A stretch of DNA of 64,000 nt from Vitrella brassicaformis CCMP3155 (lineage: Eukaryota > Protista > Chromerida): contig CDMY01000396.1 in assembly GCA_001179505.1 (NCBI GenBank), positions 1-64,000 of the forward strand. The letters are read 5' to 3'. The position numbers were made by a program, and so were the translations under genes. The notes under the pieces were generated by a model. It worked only from the letters and a program-made list of their open reading frames with translations, was not told the DNA's origin and ran no database searches. Below are positions 27,381-35,673 of this stretch, in pieces; the first letter of the stretch is position 1, and each line of letters begins with the position of its first letter.

Positions 27381-27915
27381 TCCCTTTCTTTGCCCTTTTT
27401 GCCATGGCGAGCTCAGTCCCGGGCTCGCATAATTGCAAGCTCAGCCCTCAGCTCGCAAAATATTCCCTGCTTTTTCCTTCGTCAGACGTTGAGAGCTCAT
27501 CGAAGGGAAGCGACCTATGCGACAAAATCGCTAAACGAATGTGCCACTTTCGCGAGAAACGGGGTGATCGAGTGAGGATCGAATTCCTCTTTTTCTCGAA
27601 CCTGGCAAATTCGTTTGCGATTTTGTCGCGGGAGGCGCTGCTCTCTGTGGCTACCAGTATACTCAGTCAAAGAAAATTCGCAAAAATGGGGAAATGCCAA
27701 AAGGGGCACCGGGAAGCTGAGCTCGCACGCTGACTCGTGCTCTAAGAAGCTCAGCAGACGGCAGCTGATGTGCTCGTTGATGTGCTTGGATGGAAGATCT
27801 GCCAAAATCGACGCCAATGCTGCTCGTGGGATCTGTCAAGACGAATGCAGTTCTATCTCTGGGTGATCAACATGCTCGCCCACTCTGTCAGCACAGCCTT
27901 CGTCCCCCTCCTGCT
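27290..27915. repeat. Bidirectional promoter cassette copy A (between POP4 copy 1 and the RAP gene)
   Basis: Reverse-complement homologous to about 47565-48190 and, in part, to about 37990-38584 (shared blocks such as GCGACAAAATCGCTAAACGAATGTGCCACTTT and GGAATTCGATCCTCACTCGATCACCCCGTTTC). Confidence 0.9.
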
Positions 27916-30900
27916 GCCCCCCAAGGCTCCATCTATCGCTCATCATCCTTCCGTCAACCGGAGGGAGAGGTGGGCCGTCATCAAGGGTGCATCCACACCA
28001 GCAAGCGCCACGAAACAGCAGGGACCATCACGGCCAGCGGCTTCTCGCCGCCGCCCCAGCAGCAGCGAGCAGATACGACAAGCTGCGACGTCGGATGAGC
28101 TGTTAGGCGTCTGCCATCGCTACCGGGGCTCCCTTCGTCCCTTCACGTGCAGCGTGGCGCTGCTGCAGCTTTCCAAGGTTGCGCGAGGGGCTGAGCAGCT
28201 GCGGACCATGAGAGAGGACAGTCGGTTCCAGCAGCTGGTGGAGGAGACCCTGGCGGGCATCGACAAGATGGAGCCAAGGTCACTGGCTACTTGTCTTTGG
28301 GCTCTGACAAGGTCAACATGATAAGACAATAGGCAGGCGAGCCGGCCCACCCATCATGGCTGCAAGCCCCCATTCACGCGTTCGCTTGTATCGCAGACTG
28401 GGCGCCGATGTTCCTCGTGAATCCCTCGATCGCTTCAGTGCCGCCATCCTGGCGTACGCAGCGACGCCGGGTGCGTTTGAGGAGGCTGACATGGGATTCT
28501 TGTGGCATGCCGTGGCCGAGGGAGGGATCAGGCACGATGCGGCGGTGAGGGCGCTGATGCGGATGACGAAGGAGAGCTTCGTCCGCGTGACGCCCCGTAC
28601 TTTGGCTGCCATGATCAAGGCCATAAGCAGAGGCCAGTGGAGGGACGATGAAATGCTAGAGGTTAGCGCTGACTGGGCACGCGATGGACGTGTCTTCCAT
28701 ATCCTTTGTCTCTTCTGTCAGCTGTCCACCTCGCGGCTATTGCGTGACCTCGCGGGTCGCCCTGATACCGTCCCCAACAGTCTTGTGGCCACGGCTTTAC
28801 CTGCGTTAGGGGACCTTGGCCACCACCCGCCCTCTCTGCTGCCCCTCACTGCGCAATATCTGATGTCAGCATCACCTCACGCCGACCTCGCTACCAAGTG
28901 GAGAAGGGGAAGCATCGCGCCGTTCATGAGAGGACTGTGTCAGCATCTCGCCGCAGTGTATCCCGACGGAAGCAACCCACCTCAGACGCTGATCGACCTG
29001 GCAACGCATTGGTCTCGGAGTCTGTTGCCGCTTCTTGATGGCACCCCATCATCTCTTCTTGATGCGATCACCATGGTTATGGTGCGGCTGACCTATGGAG
29101 GGCCTTTCAGGTGCCATTATCTGGATGAAGAGACCCATTTTGGGCGTGCTGCCGTGGAGGGCTTCTTTGTTGCGCTCAAGAGCGCGTGGCTGGCTAGAAT
29201 CGAGACGGCCGAGGGACGAAAGGACATCGAAAGTGCAGAATGCTCCAACGCCATCGCCTTCCTCAAAGCTCGAGGCGAGCACGAGGCCGCAGACGAGCTG
29301 GCTATCATGCACTCTGGCGACAGGATGGGCCAGGCAGCTTTCAGCCGGACGCTCTCGCGAGATATCGAGACTCTCTCGTGGGACGACCTGCTCAGCCGAT
29401 GCTGTTCCTTTCGCCTCGACGATCACCGCGCGGGCATCCCCTTCCTCGATGCAACCAATCTCGCTCTCGCCATTGCAGGCATTTCCGTTACGGCCGTGGA
29501 CATGGAAAGGCGGAGAGACCTCTTTACCGACCATAGATTCCTGGCCCTCGTCGCACGTGCCGTCGACAAGATGCGCACGGCCGATTTGATGCTACAGGCC
29601 AACGCCGTGAGCAGCCTCGCGAAGCTTGGCTGGTGGGAAGGCGTGGCGGAGGGCGACCTGGGGCTAGAGTGGCGGTCATATGAGACGCTGGTTTGCAATG
29701 CACTGGCCGCAGCGGAGAGGGAAGCGGGTGAGGGAAGGGTGGACTGGCAGGCAGTGGCCACGTTGGTATGGGCGGTTGGTCACGTGGGGGTCGCCACTGA
29801 TGGCATCCGCCAGGTGAGCAGCGCCAGGCAAAAGGCAGGCAGAGACATCCAATCATCTCATTGATTTCCCTTTCCTTCCAGCGCCTGTCATCTCTCCTGT
29901 CTCGCTGCTCGCCCGACGGCGACGCGCTTCGCGAAATCGGGGCCATCGCAACCATGTTATTCGGATTGGGGTCACTCCAGTGGACGGCAGGGGATAATTT
30001 CACACGGCTCGTCCAGCACTATGTGGTCCGTGTTAACGGCAGGCGGCCTGAGAAGACGTCACAGGGCCTCGCGAACGTAGTCTGGGCAATGGGGAAGCTG
30101 AAATGGAGGGATGACAAGACGCTCAAGGTCAGCAACGCTGGGGGTCTCCTCACTTGCTTACCCCTACACTATGGCGTTTTCGCAGGCTCTCGAGCCCATA
30201 GTGATCCACCACCTGAACCATACCCAGCCCGAAGGCATGTCGCAGATTCTGTGGGCCATGGGTCGACTGAAATGGTCGTCGTCTCGTCTGCTCGACGCCG
30301 TGGCCACAGCCATCTGCAGCCGCGAGGATAGTCTTGCAGCCGCGAGCATAAGAGATGCTGACTTGATGCTGCTGACGATGGCCAGCTTGGGATGGCGAGA
30401 CGAAAGGCTGCTGTCAAGGGTGGAGAGGTGCGTGCGGGAGGAAGCGTCGGAGGCAACACCTGAGGTCAGGGGATGGATGGATGAATGGATGTGTGGACAG
30501 ACACACGTCTGCCTCCCTGTGTTGTGTGTGTGTCAGGAGTGTGGGTCGCTGATATGGGCTGCGGGTGAGCTGCAGTGGGACTCCCCTCCCCTACTGACCA
30601 AACTCACCGACACCCTGCAACGGCACATCAGGTACCACTCACTACCCACACACATGCATTGCATTGCATTGCATTCACGCACACATGAATGAATACACTC
30701 GCGTGTGTATTGCATTGCTGTCCTCCAAAGTGTATGTGGCGGTGGTGCGACCTCCCTCTCGCCCAAGACAATTTACCTCACCCTGCACGGCCTTCGCATG
30801 CTACAGCACAGCGACCATCTGCTCGTGGGGCAGATGGTGGCCCTGGTCCCCTCTCTGCTGCAGAGCATGACGGCAGAGAGTGAGATGGACCCGGCCATCG

Positions 30901-33900
30901 AGCGGCTGCTGAATGAGTTGAGCCAGCTTCCACCGATTGATGCCTCACTCGACAGTCTCATGCTCGACAGCGTTGCTGCGGTGAGTGGGGCGAGAGGGTG
31001 AGTGCACAGAGGGCGGCGGCGGTAGTGATCCTTCCCTGTACTTTTCTGTCAGTACGTGTCCGGCCACATATCGCATGCTGACGAGGGCACACTCCGTGCG
31101 GCTGTGAGGTTGTTCGCAGCGCGTGGCGACGTCATGGAGCTGATCAGGTCTATCACCGAAGCCGCAACAACAGCTCAATACGACGATGCAGCCAAGAGAA
31201 AGGTATTTATTACACAGGTCTCCCCTCAACCCTCACACAACACAACCGTGTCTGTGTCCTCGTTCCTGTCTGTCATCAGGCAGCCCGGCGGGCTCTTCTC
31301 GTGTACCATCGCACCGGCATGGCCCCTGACGACCCCCGCACGCTGTCATGGCTGCTCGACGCATCCCTCCAGGAATTGCATGAAGAGGACACGTCTTCTC
31401 TGGTCAGCCTCCTCTCAACTCACAGAAGCATCGGGGGGCTTGGCAACAGGCGGATGGAGCCGTTGCTGACGGAGCTGGGGGGTAGACTGAATGAGGGTAA
31501 CATGACCCTACATGAGGTGACGGGACTCCTGGATGGCCTGGTGGACCGCTATCCGTCGTTCGTGGAGGACCACCGTGACGCCATCGCCAAACAGGTGCGT
31601 CTTCATGTGCAGCACACACGTCCATGCGATATGGAATGTCTGTTGCCTGCCGGATCAGGTGACGGCCGCAGTGGAGCGATCGCGACCTTCTCACAGTGTT
31701 CCCGACCCACGAGAGCCATCCAAGCGACTCGCCGACCTGTGGAGGCTTGCCCGGATCACCCCACGGGTGTTCGACGGTGTCCCTGAGGCCGTCGTGGTGG
31801 CCCTTGCATCGGCAAACGTGGAGGGCGTGCAATGGGAGCGGAAACGACGCGTGCACTTGCTGCTGACGCTGTGCAAGCTCTTGCGTGACCAGCAAATGAA
31901 GAAGAAAACGGAGAGGCTGCTCGTTAAGGCGATTGAGGAACGGATCGCGGATGTCGTACTCCCTGCCAAGGACACATCCTCTCTCGAGGCCGACGAGACG
32001 GCGGCACTCGGGCTGGCCTTGGCCTACATGCACCAGCATCAGCACGGCAAACGGCTGGCTGACGCGTATCCGGCCTTCTACACATCGCTGATGGACACCA
32101 TCCTCACAGTTCTATTGTACCACCGCACAGCCCTCGACCCTTCATCCATCGCCAGCCTCATTTTCGCCGTCGTACATCTCCCGGGTGTGTTGCCACAGTC
32201 GGCGGTCGACATGGTCATCTCTCGCGCGCTGAGGGAGGAACCATCTGCGCGCGTGGCGGCCATCTTGTGTCGTTATGTGGCGATCGGAGGCGCGGCTGCC
32301 AGCTGGCGACCTGTGAATATGATGGTTGACCGGTTGGCGGCGGATCATGACGCGGGAGAGGTCCGACGAGCCTTGAGGGTGTTCGAACGCGCTGAGCTGG
32401 GGCGGGCTGATGCACAAGTGGGCTGGGCTAAATGGGGGGAGAGAGTGAAGAGGGACGTGGTCAGGTCACTTCACTCACGTGTCTGTGCTGTGTGTGTGTG
32501 TATGGTATGGGTGGGGTGGATGCAGCGCCTGGTCGACGTCATTCTTGAGCGCGGTCTGTCACGTCATTATGGGCCCCCTGACGTCGTCATGGCTGTGCTG
32601 GATATTGCCGTGGAAGTTGCGAGGAGGGCTGACGTGGCCGAAGGGGTGAGGGAGCGGGTGGAGCAGTACCTGGCGGGCCCTCTCACAGACACGAAATCGC
32701 TCAGCAGGTGAATGGAATTTGAAAGGCATTCATTCATTCATGTTCGAGCTGCTTCCATCGACTGGGCGGTCCATTCCATGTGTGTGCTGTGCTGTGCTGT
32801 TGTGTCAGGATGGACATGAGGGCTCTGCGTCGATTGATTGGGCTAATGGCGTTCGCAGAGGACGGCAAAAGGATGACCGCCGAGGCAGACCTCACCACAT
32901 GGAGGGTAACTAACACAACCCAAGAAGCACGCAACCTTCTTTGCTGTACTCCCCTGGTGCCTGGTTGTGGCTGTCTCTCATTTTAGGCCATTTGCGAGCG
33001 ATACATAAGCCTCTTGGCGTCAGCCGACCTCCCGGCCACCCTGCTCACGTTCGAGCATCTCGCCAATGCCCGAGTGCATCACCCCGCCCTCATGGAGGCA
33101 CTCGCCACTGCCATCGAGTATCGTGGTTCCCTGGACACGATAAGTCCAGCTCTGGTGTGTCGATGCGCATCGGCTCTGACGCTCTGTGCTCCGACGGATG
33201 GGTTGAGGAGATGTGCTGCTCTCATCGCAGATACCGCTGGTGTGTGAGCTGCGCACACAACACTTGCCATGCCATGGGTCAGCCATTTGGTGTAGGGTAG
33301 GCATGACTAACTGGTGTGCAAATGTCTGTCAGATCGGCGGCAGCTGGACCTTGACTTGGTCGTCGCGTCGATTATTGGCCGTGCGCTCGCCGTATGTGGG
33401 GTGTTTGAGCCGGCTGGGCTGTTCAAGCGCATCTTCTCACACGCTGCGGTGCTCACGGCCGACAAGGCAATGGACGAGGCGACACAGATTGTGGCATCCC
33501 GGCTGCAGCAGGCTCGCCTTGCGTGGGAGGTTGAGTGCGGTTCCCTTCCAACATCACCGACAGAGCCACAGCCGCCGCCGGCCACTCGTCCACAAGCGTC
33601 ATCCTGGGTCGACCAATGCGCCGACGATCTGCAAGACACCGACGCGGCCATCGATGAGCAGGGGTCTGAATGGAGCAGCGATGGGGGAGAGGACAACAAG
33701 TGGGTCGTTCCGGGGGCTGTGGGTGGGGGAGGGGTGCGGGCACTGGCAAGGTGGCAGAGGGCGCTCACGGTGGTCGGGGAGGAGGTGGCCACCAAGTCAT
33801 CTCGCCTGCACACACTCGTGTCGGACCAGCTCGATGCTCTCGGCGTCCTACATGAGAACGAGGCCGTCACAAAGGAGGGCGTCTCGATCGATGTCCGAAT

Positions 33901-34597
33901 CACACTGGTAAGGTGAACCGACCCACGCACATATCCATGGCCGGCCACCTGTGCTGTCGTTGTGTGGTGGCTTGGCTGTGCTGTGCTGTGCAGCGGGGTC
34001 ATGAGAAAGTTGCCATCGAGGTTGACGGCCCGAAGCACTTTGTCCGAGACGTCACTACGGTCAGTCAGTCAGCCAACCAGACAGTCGGTCGGCACGTAGC
34101 CACCCACTCCATGTATGTGTGAATATGTCGACCGCTCTGTTGTCTGTGTGTCAATGACTCCTCCGGTCACTCATGTATGTCAGGGTGCCTTCATCGCCCA
34201 CGCCACCGCCGTCCACAAGCGACGAACGCTGGCCAGCAGAGGCTGGAAAGTCATCTCGCTCGACTTCCTCTCCATCGACCAGCGAGGCATTTCCTATGTG
34301 CAAGATGAGCTCACACGTGCGGGAGTCCTGGCAAGTGCCGCTGGGTGTGATGATGACGACCCCATTGACCTGCTCAAGAAGCTGCGGGTTAGAAACAACA
34401 AAGGTCGGGGGCTGGGCATCGCGTGGAGCGAGAAGGATCGGTGTTTTCGCGTCCGTCTGCAGCACGGAGGAAGGAGGCATGACCTGGGCAAGTTCGCGGC
34501 CAGGCGGGGAGGGGTGGGGGTGGCTCTCGACAAGGCCCTGGCAGCGAGGAATGGATTGGCTGCGCAGCTGGGGCTGCCACTAGTGGAGGGCGTGTGA
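27845..34597 (+). CDS. Plastid-targeted helical-repeat (HPR/OPR-like) RAP-domain protein with C-terminal AP2-like domain
   Basis: N-terminus MQFYLWVINMLAHSVSTA-FVP (signal + Phe). Repeats include MEPRSLATCLWAL, TSQGLANVVWAMGKLKWRD, QPEGMSQILWAMGRLKW and ECGSLIWAAGELQW. RAP domain: KVAIEVDGPKHF...HKRRTLASRGWKVISL. Tail: GIAWSEKDRCFRVRLQHGGRRHDLGKF...ALAARN. Confidence 0.85.
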
Positions 34598-34722
34598 CGG
34601 GATGAGTGTGGGCTTATGCATGCGAGCGCTTTTTCTGTTGATACGACCGTCTTGTAGCGCAGAACTCCTCTGTGGCCCCGAGATTTACACATGTAAACAA
34701 CAGAGCTTTTTGCGGAAAGAGA

Positions 34723-35673
34723 ATGGCTTCTCTGAAGCGAAGTAGCGACACCGTGCCCACCAGCCTGTCGGCACCGGACCTGCCGGAGCGTTTCACCCTC
34801 AACGTCGGCGGCAAGCACGTGCAGATCCAGACGAAAACGCTTCTCTCGCGACCCGACGATGGCAGATCTCTCATCGGCCACATCACGGCGGAGATGCGCA
34901 AGCAGGAAGTGACCATGGGCGACAGCACGGTGATTTCCAACCGCAACGTGTTTCTCGACCGCAACTCGGAGCTCATGGACCTCTTGCTGATGTGGTTCCG
35001 CCAGGGTGAGGCCTGCCAGGTCCGCCGCTGGCCGACGGAGGTCCTCCACTACCTCATCCCCGAAGCCGACCACTTCGGTGAGAAATCAGACAGAGCGGTG
35101 GGATCGGATGGCCGCAGGGTGCGGTGCGCAGATCAGATCTCTCCATCACATGCTCTCTCTTCCCTGGTTGCGTATGTATTGTGTGTGTGGCAGGTTTGTT
35201 GTCGTTGCGTCAGGAGATAGAGGAGGCGCTGCAGGGCCGGGGCGGCATGGCCATGGCCGCATCGGCTGGCGAGGAGGTGGACGTAGAGGGCGAGGGTGAG
35301 GGAGAGGGCATGGACGGCGGCGAGTGCGAGGGCACGGAGGATGACACGGACGAGGAGGGCACAGAGACCCCTCCGATGCCCAATGACGAACAAGTCGGCG
35401 ACCCCATCTTCTACAAGGAGGATGGCAAACCGGTAAGTGAGCATACCTAGATGGATGGATGGATGGATGGATGGGTGTGTGTGTCAGGCCGACGGTGTGG
35501 TTCGTCGCAACATGGAGTTGGGTGTGTTGGCGAGTGTGGCGTCTGCCGGCCCCAACGTGCTGCGGCGCCACGCCACTGTGTCGGCGGCGCAGACGGCGGC
35601 CCGCGAGAAGCAGCACCTCAACCTCAAGCCAGAGATAGACTTCAAGGTGTTCACACCAGACTGGGACAAGTAG
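34723..35673 (+). CDS. BTB/POZ (KCTD/T1-type) domain protein with acidic tail
   Basis: FTLNVGGKHVQIQTKTLLSRPD...VFLDRNSELMDLLLMWFRQG...EADHFG|LLSL matches the KCTD BTB pattern; three exons. Confidence 0.8.

What the first reader, a model, noticed from the sequence alone, without database searches (positions are those of the whole stretch)
33990..34597. Plastid-targeted HPR/RAP RNA-binding protein ends in an AP2-like DNA-binding domain
After the RAP domain (IEVDGPKHF...RGWKVI), the same exon continues into GLGIAWSEKDRCFRVRLQHGGRRHDLGKFAARRGGVGVALDKALAARN. This fits the AP2 pattern (GV.W......W.a.....G....lg.F......A...A...R). The N-terminus has a signal peptide followed by Phe (STA-FVP), typical of complex-plastid import. 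HPR/OPR-RAP proteins are known organellar RNA-processing factors; I do not know this fusion with AP2, which could link plastid DNA and RNA metabolism.
Basis: partly seen in the sequence, partly recalled or inferred. Interest (0 to 1): 0.72.

Follow-up and report, generated by a model that had tools for sequence, protein, structure and literature searches.

The report
RAP protein ending in AP2-fold domain
An expressed gene of the alga Vitrella brassicaformis encodes an organelle-type RNA-processing protein (helical repeats plus RAP domain) that ends in a real but very divergent AP2-type nucleic-acid-binding domain, a combination I found nowhere else, and about a third of its transcripts splice half of that domain out.

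Summary
The gene (window 27872-34597, + strand) is the annotated 1825-aa Vitrella brassicaformis protein CEM09858.1, named only "RAP domain-containing protein". Its last 65 residues (34388-34582) are a divergent AP2-fold domain. Pfam's AP2 model misses it. However, an exhaustive phmmer search returns almost only multi-AP2 proteins. hhalign against 34 AP2 stretches gives 97.5% probability (E 8e-12). The AlphaFold model has three strands plus a helix. Its best matches among 48,161 PDB chains are PfSIP2 AP2 and the AP2 proteins of the Toxoplasma mitoribosome (Z 6.8-7.6).

RNA-derived contigs confirm the splicing into the tail.

No other protein with RAP plus this tail was found, and no orthologue at all. 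The plastid signal-peptide claim depends on an unannotated upstream ATG and stays open. A role on DNA is untested. Myzozoan mitochondrial AP2 proteins bind rRNA, which makes an RNA-anchoring role beside the RAP nuclease-like domain more likely.

This is a new variant of known kinds and moderately interesting. The scan had noted the same locus once before, from an overlapping window (s1-231197), not on other DNA.

The parts
27845..27871 (+). Possible 9-codon N-terminal extension from an unannotated in-frame ATG.
   Evidence: Sequence and frame translation. The RNA contig of run X6 reaches about 27777 by my arithmetic. Out-of-frame ATGs lie at 27780, 27790 and 27817, so the start-codon choice is unresolved.
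27872..33907 (+). Annotated start codon, an S/R/P/A-rich N-terminus with few acidic residues, and about 1660 residues of helical repeats. The span is multi-exon; the introns fall inside it.
   Evidence: tblastn of P0001 on the window and twelve GT..AG joints in spliced contigs. The motif '..LW A.G.L.W..' recurs at residues 583, 624, 665, 702 and 779, i.e. at 37-41 aa spacing. Only 2 acidic residues occur in the 60 after STA|F.
33994..34059 (+). 66-nt micro-exon encoding the N-terminal half of the RAP domain, including the E-x-D-G-x-x-H motif.
   Evidence: Joints 33906/33993 and 34058/34183 in runs X1, X5 and X6. Pfam RAP matches P0001 residues 1674-1718 with E 5.6e-5 and 23.5 bits.
34060..34183 (+). 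124-nt GT..AG intron that splits the RAP domain.
   Evidence: Spliced contigs in three runs, with zero intron depth in X1, X5 and X6 by bin arithmetic.
34184..34273 (+). C-terminal half of the RAP domain, at the start of the last exon.
   Evidence: Pfam RAP match and translation.
34274..34387 (+). 38-residue linker, acidic in its middle (DDDD), predicted as a helix then coil.
   Evidence: Translation. AlphaFold models show low confidence here.
34388..34582 (+). Divergent AP2-fold domain, P0001 residues 1757-1821. It has 14 K/R against 4 D/E. Predicted elements: strand 1 at 34412-34429, strand 2 at 34442-34465, strand 3 at 34472-34498, helix at 34514-34570.
   Evidence: phmmer hits are AP2 proteins. 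hhalign 97.5%. Shuffle control. AlphaFold model with pLDDT 74. Top fold matches are AP2 domains, Z 6.8-7.9. Charge count.
34388..34462 (+). Alternatively spliced in-frame 75-nt 'exitron' (GT..AG). It encodes 25 residues covering strand 1 and nearly all of strand 2 of the AP2-fold domain. It is retained in roughly two thirds of transcripts.
   Evidence: Joint 34386/34462 in X1, X5 and X6, with the unspliced contig 34358-34491 beside it (X1 depth 6.3 against 3.4). Splice-site sequences. Translation.
34595..34597 (+). Stop codon TGA.
   Evidence: RNA contigs continue past it to at least 34601-34617.

Best explanation
Shown: this is an expressed nuclear gene of Vitrella brassicaformis. It encodes an 1825-aa protein of the organellar helical-repeat/RAP class. 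One divergent AP2-fold domain has been added to its C-terminus, 38 residues after the RAP endonuclease-like domain. The main mRNA encodes the intact domain. A minor isoform, about one third of transcripts, uses an in-frame 75-nt exitron and loses strands 1-2, so it cannot form the fold.

Inferred: the very basic AP2 module (net charge +10) is an accessory nucleic-acid-binding module. It most likely contacts the RNA backbone or RNA ends, as the arginine-rich AP2 domains of the four myzozoan mitoribosomal AP2 proteins do. In that role it would help the helical repeats hold or position an organellar transcript or rRNA fragment next to the RAP domain. Exitron splicing would then produce a second form of the protein without this anchor. 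Whether the protein acts in the plastid or the mitochondrion is not settled.
For: Identity and expression:
- The protein is CEM09858.1 / A0A0G4FB35.
- Contigs in runs X1, X5 and X6 skip 12 canonical introns and run from the RAP exons through the tail past the stop.

AP2 homology:
- 24 of the 29 non-self hits of the exhaustive search match the tail region, usually several times per protein.
- 41 of the 52 stretches aligned to the tail are themselves Pfam AP2.
- The tail carries all six nearly invariant alignment columns.
- hhalign against an AP2 alignment that excludes the tail gives 97.5% probability, E 8.4e-12. That profile finds WRI1, TEM1, ERF096 and AtERF1 in the PDB.
- In the shuffle control, 0 of 5000 shuffles reach the real score.

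Fold:
- The strand-strand-strand-helix order appears even without an alignment, and at pLDDT 74 with one.
- In an all-against-48,161-chain comparison the top four matches are AP2 domains: PfSIP2 Z 7.6, Toxoplasma mL161 Z 7.4 and 7.1, mS130 Z 6.8. The next unrelated chain scores 5.2.

RNA precedent:
- Mitochondrial AP2 domains bind rRNA fragments through arginines and are essential.
- The tail has 14 K/R in 65 residues.

Exitron:
- Three runs show the joint with canonical GT..AG ends. It is in frame and a multiple of three.
Against: - Pfam's AP2 model gives no hit on the tail even at E<=10.
- Foldseek E-values are not significant (0.07-0.5), and VIA Z stays under 8, a range the tool calls middling.
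- The alignment used for the better model was built from AP2 hits, so that model is not independent of the sequence evidence.
- Whole-library E-values of the phmmer hits sum several weak per-domain scores (the best single domain is 27.7 bits).
- No orthologue or second RAP+AP2 protein exists in the searched data, so there is no conservation evidence that the tail is under selection.
- A third of transcripts discard half of the domain.
- The exitron junction contigs have only 29-30 nt on each side, below the tool's 31-nt rule of thumb, and isoform ratios from contig depth are rough.
- Nothing here tests binding, substrate or localisation.
Confidence: 0.6

Rival explanations
1. One reading: the AP2 tail is a sequence-specific DNA-binding domain. 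It tethers the RAP protein to plastid (or mitochondrial) DNA and so couples transcription with RNA processing.
For: The fold and sequence family are those of dsDNA-binding AP2 domains. The best structural match is PfSIP2 bound to DNA. The profile of the tail's relatives hits plant AP2/ERF-DNA complexes. The domain is strongly basic.
Against: The only organellar AP2 proteins characterised so far, the four in Toxoplasma and Perkinsus, are ribosomal proteins bound to rRNA and were shown not to act as transcription factors. The tail departs from the consensus at several usually conserved positions (RGV becomes LGI, the helix EEAARAYD becomes GGVGVALD). The rest of the protein belongs to an RNA-binding class.
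Confidence: 0.2
2. The tail is a young, lineage-specific accretion with little or no function. An AP2-like module from Vitrella's own expanded repertoire (related to the repeats of CEM28282.1) was captured at the 3' end of a RAP gene. The exitron reflects an unsettled gene structure.
For: The closest relative of the tail is a repeat family in another Vitrella protein (E 4.9e-10; hhalign 93.8%). No orthologue of the fusion was found anywhere. One third of transcripts remove half of the domain.
Against: The open frame, all six nearly invariant core positions and a confidently predicted fold are retained. The domain-encoding form is the major mRNA, while neighbouring introns are fully spliced. 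The exitron is in frame, so both products are full-length proteins rather than decay targets.
Confidence: 0.17
3. The resemblance is chance or a gene-model artefact, either read-through of non-coding sequence or fusion of two genes.
For: Pfam AP2 does not detect the tail. Part of the domain can be spliced out like an intron.
Against: The shuffle control, hhalign and the fold searches argue against chance. The AP2 match spans both the exitron and the downstream part in one frame. One uninterrupted ORF runs from the RAP half into the tail. Unspliced-exitron contigs occur in runs that have zero depth in the two neighbouring introns.
Confidence: 0.03

Closest known systems
Mitochondrial AP2 proteins of Myzozoa (Toxoplasma mtAP2-1 to -4, also named mS130, mL143, mL153, mL161; conserved in Perkinsus and Vitrella)
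   Same: Both have an AP2 fold used inside an organellar RNA machine, arginine-rich, and working alongside RAP and HPR proteins. mL161 and mS130 are among the four best structural matches of the tail (Z 7.4/7.1 and 6.8, 18-21% identity).
   Different: Those are small stand-alone AP2 proteins with long extensions, and their RAP partners are separate polypeptides. Here a single AP2 module is fused to a 1750-aa helical-repeat/RAP protein. CEM09858 is not among the Vitrella orthologues listed for any Toxoplasma mitoribosomal protein. The compartment is unknown.
HPR/OPR/FASTK-type helical-repeat proteins with a C-terminal RAP domain (PfRAP01/21, Toxoplasma mL136/138/141/147, Chlamydomonas Raa3/TDA1, Arabidopsis RAP, human FASTKD1-5)
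   Same: Long degenerate repeats of about 37-41 aa followed by a RAP domain with the D...E-x-D-G-x-x-H signature, an N-terminus poor in acidic residues, and nuclear encoding.
   Different: In those proteins RAP is the last domain. A survey of 267 of them found no recurrent extra domain and no AP2. This protein continues for 107 residues into an AP2 fold.
ApiAP2 / AP2-ERF transcription factors (PfSIP2, AtERF1, WRI1, TEM1)
   Same: Same fold and the same conserved core positions: the G of RGV, the W ending strand 1, an aromatic residue in strand 2, LGxF, and the A..D.A helix.
   Different: The tail scores below Pfam's detection limit. It has a single copy at the extreme C-terminus of an organellar-type RNA-binding protein, with no other transcription-factor features. 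DNA binding is untested.
HNH-AP2 homing endonucleases of cyanobacteria and phages, and AP2-like arm-binding domains of integrases (from established literature: Magnani et al. 2004, Balaji et al. 2005; the latter is cited within)
   Same: A nuclease-type catalytic fold is joined to an AP2 targeting module. A P4-like integrase arm-binding domain appears among the weak fold matches (Z 3.4).
   Different: The nuclease-like part here is RAP (PD-(D/E)XK/Vsr-like), not HNH or a tyrosine recombinase. No HNH domain is detected. No mobility is evident. This is an analogy only.

Membership tests
AP2 domain (Pfam PF00847) | Match to the Pfam AP2 model at or above its gathering score (33.3 bits) | tested here: not met
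   No AP2 hit on the tail, the last exon or the full protein, even at E<=10.
AP2 domain (Pfam PF00847) | Significant profile-level sequence similarity to bona fide AP2 domains over the whole domain | tested here: met
   hhalign gives 97.5% probability, E 8.4e-12, over 69 columns against 34 AP2 stretches that exclude the tail. 41 of 52 aligned stretches are Pfam AP2. The profile hits PDB AP2/ERF chains. Shuffles reach at most 7.1 bits against 37.2.
AP2 domain (Pfam PF00847) | Three-stranded antiparallel sheet packed against a C-terminal helix | tested here: met
   This is a prediction only. The models show E18-23, E28-35, E38-46 and H52-70 at pLDDT 74, and the same order without an alignment. 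The top matches among 48,161 chains are AP2 domains, Z 6.8-7.6, 61-66 residues aligned, rmsd 2.5-3.2.
AP2 domain (Pfam PF00847) | Conserved core positions (G in RGV, W at the end of strand 1, aromatic in strand 2, LGxF, A..D.A in the helix) | tested here: met
   The tail carries all six nearly invariant columns of alignment A1 (G19, G43, F45, A52, A55, D57), plus W and F in strands 1 and 2. It differs at R-to-L in RGV, Y-to-L before D, and lacks the acidic helix cap.
AP2 domain (Pfam PF00847) | Sequence-specific binding of double-stranded DNA | not testable with these tools
   Needs EMSA or a protein-binding microarray with the recombinant tail.
RAP domain (Pfam PF08373) | Match to the Pfam RAP model at its gathering score (24.2 bits) | tested here: inconclusive
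   23.5 bits, E 5.6e-5, residues 1674-1718 on profile positions 1-41 of 58. This is 0.7 bits under the cut-off. UniRef names the protein 'RAP domain-containing'.
HPR/OPR helical-repeat proteins | Tandem degenerate repeats of 37-40 aa forming an alpha-solenoid | tested here: inconclusive
   A regex finds the LW-A-G-L-W type motif at residues 583, 624, 665, 702 and 779, spaced 37-41 aa or twice that. No repeat profile or structure was run. Pfam has no hit in this region.
Complex-plastid bipartite targeting (signal peptide then transit peptide starting with Phe) | Cleavable signal peptide with a hydrophobic core, an AXA-type site, F at +1, and a transit peptide poor in acidic residues | tested here: inconclusive
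   Only with the unannotated ATG at 27845 is there an 18-residue pre-sequence ending STA|F. Its 11-residue Kyte-Doolittle maximum is 1.86. The following 60 residues hold 9 S, 8 R, 9 P and 2 acidic residues. No SignalP, ASAFind or TargetP was available. uATGs lie at 27780, 27790 and 27817.
Myzozoan mitoribosomal AP2 proteins (mS130, mL143, mL153, mL161) | Orthology to one of the four conserved proteins | tested here: not met
   The Vitrella orthologues listed in the paper's supplement are CEM17867, CEM08875, CEM02754 and CEL93516. CEM09858 does not occur in the supplement. phmmer of the tail against PDB sequences finds no mitoribosomal chain.
HNH-AP2 homing endonucleases | HNH nuclease domain next to AP2 | tested here: not met
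   No HNH family appears in the Pfam scan of the full protein.

The most novel reading that the evidence does not exclude
The AP2 module gives the RAP endonuclease-like domain a second, sequence-reading address. The protein would then be an organellar site-specific nuclease or processing factor built like an HNH-AP2 homing endonuclease but from RAP parts. Regulated exitron splicing would switch that address on and off, giving two factors with different targets from one gene. As a 'Rosetta-stone' fusion, it would also predict direct cooperation between the separate RAP and AP2 proteins of apicomplexan mitoribosomes.
Probability: 0.12. Interest if true: 0.78.

Novelty: new variant of a known kind. 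Interest (0 to 1): 0.5.

Why it matters
RAP/HPR proteins and AP2 proteins are the two protein families most strikingly expanded in apicomplexans and their algal relatives. Both were recently found inside the fragmented-rRNA mitoribosome as separate subunits.

A natural fusion of the two in a free-living relative is a hint that the modules can work side by side on the same RNA. It also shows that AP2 folds have entered organelle-type RNA proteins more than once. It gives a small, expressible domain (78 residues) on which RNA binding and DNA binding by an AP2 fold can be compared.

The domain is invisible to Pfam, so similar cryptic AP2 modules may be under-counted in alveolate proteomes. The in-frame exitron that deletes half of the domain is a simple natural on/off variant that could be exploited experimentally.

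The weight of all this is limited. The architecture is seen in one species only, and no function was tested.

Tried and rejected
- Pfam on the tail alone, the last exon and the full protein gave no AP2 hit. The only tail hit was a spurious CAP160 repeat, E 0.1.
- phmmer of the tail against PDB sequences gave only chance hits with E>0.9.
- phmmer of the RAP region against PDB sequences found nothing relevant.
- Foldseek on the low-confidence single-sequence model of the last exon gave meaningless matches. Foldseek on the better model gave AP2 chains with high 'prob' but non-significant E-values. I therefore relied on VIA-align.
- The ESM Atlas feature search gave no usable hit.
- The word-index homologue search with the C-terminal 186 residues, and with the whole protein, returned only the protein itself.
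- The metagenome contig scan with the last exon matched 306 patterns, none confirmed.
- Literature searches for the accessions found no paper (its third term, a locus tag I guessed, also found nothing). Searches for RAP or HPR together with AP2 found no described fusion.
- Cluster look-up of the AP2 hits showed only unnamed metagenomic proteins, one cluster mislabelled 'ketopantoate reductase'. The donor lineage of the AP2 module could therefore not be named.
- Rejected: that the 75-nt segment is an ordinary intron wrongly read as coding. The AP2 match runs in frame across it and the following exon. It is also the only spliced segment that stays unspliced in runs where neighbouring introns have zero depth.
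- Left out: the exitron-spliced protein (25 residues shorter) has no reference. I never searched a self-joined spliced model; the full-length protein used was the database entry P0001 returned.

Full report
**What is there.** The window is eukaryotic, about 58% G+C, with short GT..AG introns. I confirmed this. The last exon is 100% identical to residues 1689-1825 of an 1825-aa protein, P0001. That protein is CEM09858.1 / UniRef A0A0G4FB35 of V. brassicaformis CCMP3155, "unnamed protein product / RAP domain-containing protein".

tblastn places it at 27872-34594 on the + strand. At the 3' end the structure is:
- an exon ending at 33907;
- intron 33908-33993;
- a 66-nt micro-exon, 33994-34059, holding the E-V-D-G-P-K-H part of RAP;
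- intron 34060-34183;
- the last exon, 34184-34597.

The RAP domain is split by an intron. From RGWKVI onward one exon runs into the tail.

**Transcription.** One search found eight coded runs, and I laid four of them. The contigs of X1, X5 and X6 skip twelve canonical introns of this gene. By bin arithmetic they have zero depth inside 33908-33993 and 34060-34183. For example, X1's mean of 2.98 over the 33974-34172 bin equals depth 9 times the 66 exon bases divided by the bin's 199 bases. I therefore treat these three runs as RNA-derived. X7 carries the introns and looks like DNA.

The spliced contigs run from the RAP exons into the tail and past the stop.

The same three runs also hold a further joint, 34386/34462. 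It skips 75 nt with GT..AG ends (CGG|GTTAGA ... TCTGCAG|CAC). Beside it lies an unspliced contig, 34358-34491. The skipped piece is in frame, has no stop, and encodes 25 residues. In X1 the depths are 6.3 retained against 3.4 spliced, and my bin arithmetic for X5 and X6 gives a similar 2:1. This is an exitron, an alternatively spliced piece of coding exon.

Three cautions apply. Contig depth is a poor measure of level. The junction contigs are 59 nt with 29-30 nt on each side. The runs' RNA nature is inferred, not on record.

**Is the tail an AP2 domain?** Pfam says nothing. There is no AP2 hit on the tail, the last exon or the full protein, even at E<=10. Four other lines say yes.

*1. Exhaustive search.* phmmer of the 137-aa last exon against 1.84 billion representatives gave 30 hits at E<=0.001.
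- Apart from the protein itself, 24 of 29 match the tail region, mostly several times per protein.
- Six of the eight non-Vitrella hits scanned whole are strong Pfam AP2 proteins, E 1e-11 to 1e-31. Their AP2 coordinates coincide with the matched stretches.
- Of the 52 stretches I aligned to the tail, 41 are Pfam AP2 on their own.
- Each single-domain match is weak (at most 27.7 bits). The library-wide significance comes from summed repeats.

*2. Profile comparison.* In the alignment the tail carries all six nearly invariant columns and follows the consensus GV.W.K...KW.A.I...GK.H.LG.F..EE.AARAYD.AA. It has F for the second W. It differs at RGV (LGI here) and at the start of the helix (GGVGVALD for EEAARAYD).
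- Against an alignment of 34 AP2 stretches that excludes the tail, hhalign gives 97.5% probability, E 8.4e-12, over 69 columns.
- That profile finds WRI1, TEM1, ERF096 and AtERF1 in the PDB.
- A profile HMM built from the same alignment scores the tail at 37.2 bits, against a maximum of 7.1 in 5000 shuffles.
- That HMM finds exactly one such domain in P0001, at 1757-1821.

*3. Predicted structure.* AlphaFold without an alignment already gives strand-strand-strand-helix, at low confidence (pLDDT 55). With the 53-row alignment it gives pLDDT 74 and elements E18-23, E28-35, E38-46 and H52-70.

*4. Fold comparison.* Foldseek E-values are not significant for so small a domain. VIA-align over all 48,161 PDB representatives ranks four AP2 chains first:
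- PfSIP2, Z 7.6, 66 residues aligned;
- 9i05_XH, Z 7.4;
- 9g6k_LG, Z 7.1;
- 9hqv_Yn, Z 6.8.

The next unrelated chain scores 5.2, and AtERF1 scores 4.7 at 22% identity (the second look agrees). By the supplement of PMC11742926, XH is mL161 (AP2XII-10) and Yn is mS130 (AP2IX-6) of the Toxoplasma mitoribosome.

The better model leans on an AP2-rich alignment, and Z stays below 8. The fold evidence therefore supports the sequence evidence and cannot stand alone. Taken together I hold the AP2 homology at about 0.9.

**What the exitron does to the domain.** In model numbering the 25 residues are 10-34. That is all of strand 1 and all but the last residue of strand 2. The spliced isoform keeps only strand 3 and the helix and cannot form the sheet. 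I did not fold or search that isoform, because the joined sequence has no reference.

**The rest of the protein.**
- Pfam RAP matches residues 1674-1718 at E 5.6e-5 and 23.5 bits, 0.7 bits under the gathering score. The D...E-x-D-G-x-x-H signature typical of this Vsr-like nuclease fold is present. The signature is my knowledge, read directly from the sequence.
- Upstream, an LW-A-G-L-W type motif recurs at 37-41 aa spacing. This fits HPR/OPR/FASTK-like repeats, but I ran no repeat profile.
- The whole protein has no detectable homologue of comparable length, nor does its C-terminal 186 aa. Nothing turned up in metagenome contigs.

**Targeting.** The annotated N-terminus starts MLAHSVSTAF... 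and has no hydrophobic core before STA|F. An in-frame ATG 27 nt upstream (27845) adds nine residues. That gives an 18-residue pre-sequence of moderate hydrophobicity (Kyte-Doolittle 11-residue maximum 1.86). It is followed by F and 60 residues with only two acidic ones.

By my arithmetic the X6 contig reaches about 27777, so both ATGs are transcribed. Three out-of-frame ATGs (27780, 27790, 27817) precede them. An organellar destination is plausible. Plastid against mitochondrion is open. RAP proteins of this lineage are mostly predicted or shown to be mitochondrial.

**How it most likely works.** Shown: the architecture, the expression and the two isoforms. Inferred: the function.

In Toxoplasma, and by co-migration in Perkinsus, four AP2 proteins are integral mitoribosomal proteins. 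Their AP2 domains hold rRNA fragments and fragment ends, mainly through arginines on the RNA backbone. They are essential and do not act as transcription factors. RAP and HPR proteins sit in the same particle as separate chains.

The Vitrella tail is very basic, with 14 K/R against 4 D/E in 65 residues. It sits 38 residues after a RAP domain. The simplest reading is an RNA-anchoring module that adds contacts next to the RAP domain. An isoform without it is made by exitron splicing.

A young, nearly neutral accretion is also possible, at about 0.17. Supporting that view, the closest relative of the tail is a six-fold repeat in another Vitrella protein, CEM28282.1, and there is no conservation evidence.

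**Comparison with the known.** This is not one of the four conserved mitochondrial AP2 proteins. It is not a classical ApiAP2 factor and not an HNH-AP2 endonuclease. It belongs to the helical-repeat/RAP class but adds a domain that the published survey of 267 RAP proteins did not find in any of them. That survey included 31 Vitrella proteins and used SMART/Pfam. This is unsurprising, since Pfam cannot see the domain.

**Verdict.** This is a new variant of known kinds. Interest is moderate (0.5): a neat single-species architecture with a natural on/off isoform, and no functional data.

Noticed in passing
Not in the window: proteins P0003 (CEM28282.1, 1652 aa) and P0017 (CEL93990.1, 2237 aa) of Vitrella brassicaformis: P0003 carries six tandem copies of a ~75-aa module (consensus ..LRRLN...I.W....W.I....G........RT.EAIDKALEEAV.KRN.LA...G.PPI). 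The module matches the tail (hhalign 93.8%) but matches canonical AP2 only weakly (56.7%, strands 1-2 only). The tail therefore bridges a derived Vitrella-specific repeat family to AP2. P0017 has five weaker copies, one at its extreme C-terminus. Neither protein has an informative Pfam hit.
   Followed up: partly
window 27767-27871: Several upstream ATGs precede the start of the RAP gene. The uORF from 27780 ends at a TGA (27864-27866), just before the annotated ATG 27872. The one from 27790 opens a ~100-codon out-of-frame ORF. Together they make start-codon choice, and hence the predicted targeting signal, uncertain.
   Followed up: partly
window 34672-35220 (+): The next gene downstream encodes a BTB_2 (T1/KCTD-type BTB/POZ) domain protein (Pfam E 3.8e-5, above the gathering score). 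Its first in-frame ATG (34725) lies only about 130 nt after the RAP gene's stop, so the 3' UTR and the neighbour's 5' region are tightly packed or overlap.
   Followed up: partly
window 30463-30534 and several introns (e.g. 34060-34080, 35440-35470): Introns and spacers are full of short 4-nt periodic runs (GTCA, CCAT/GGAT). These give spurious ORFs with WMDG / IHPS repeats. Read laying skipped a repeat at 30467-30497, and contigs of several runs break there with unrelated loose ends.
   Followed up: no
Metagenomic protein cluster P0007 and P0031-P0034: A cluster of five-AP2-domain proteins from JGI metagenomes is labelled 'ketopantoate reductase' by its source. This looks like a mis-annotation, since Pfam finds only AP2, E 1e-31.
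   Followed up: no
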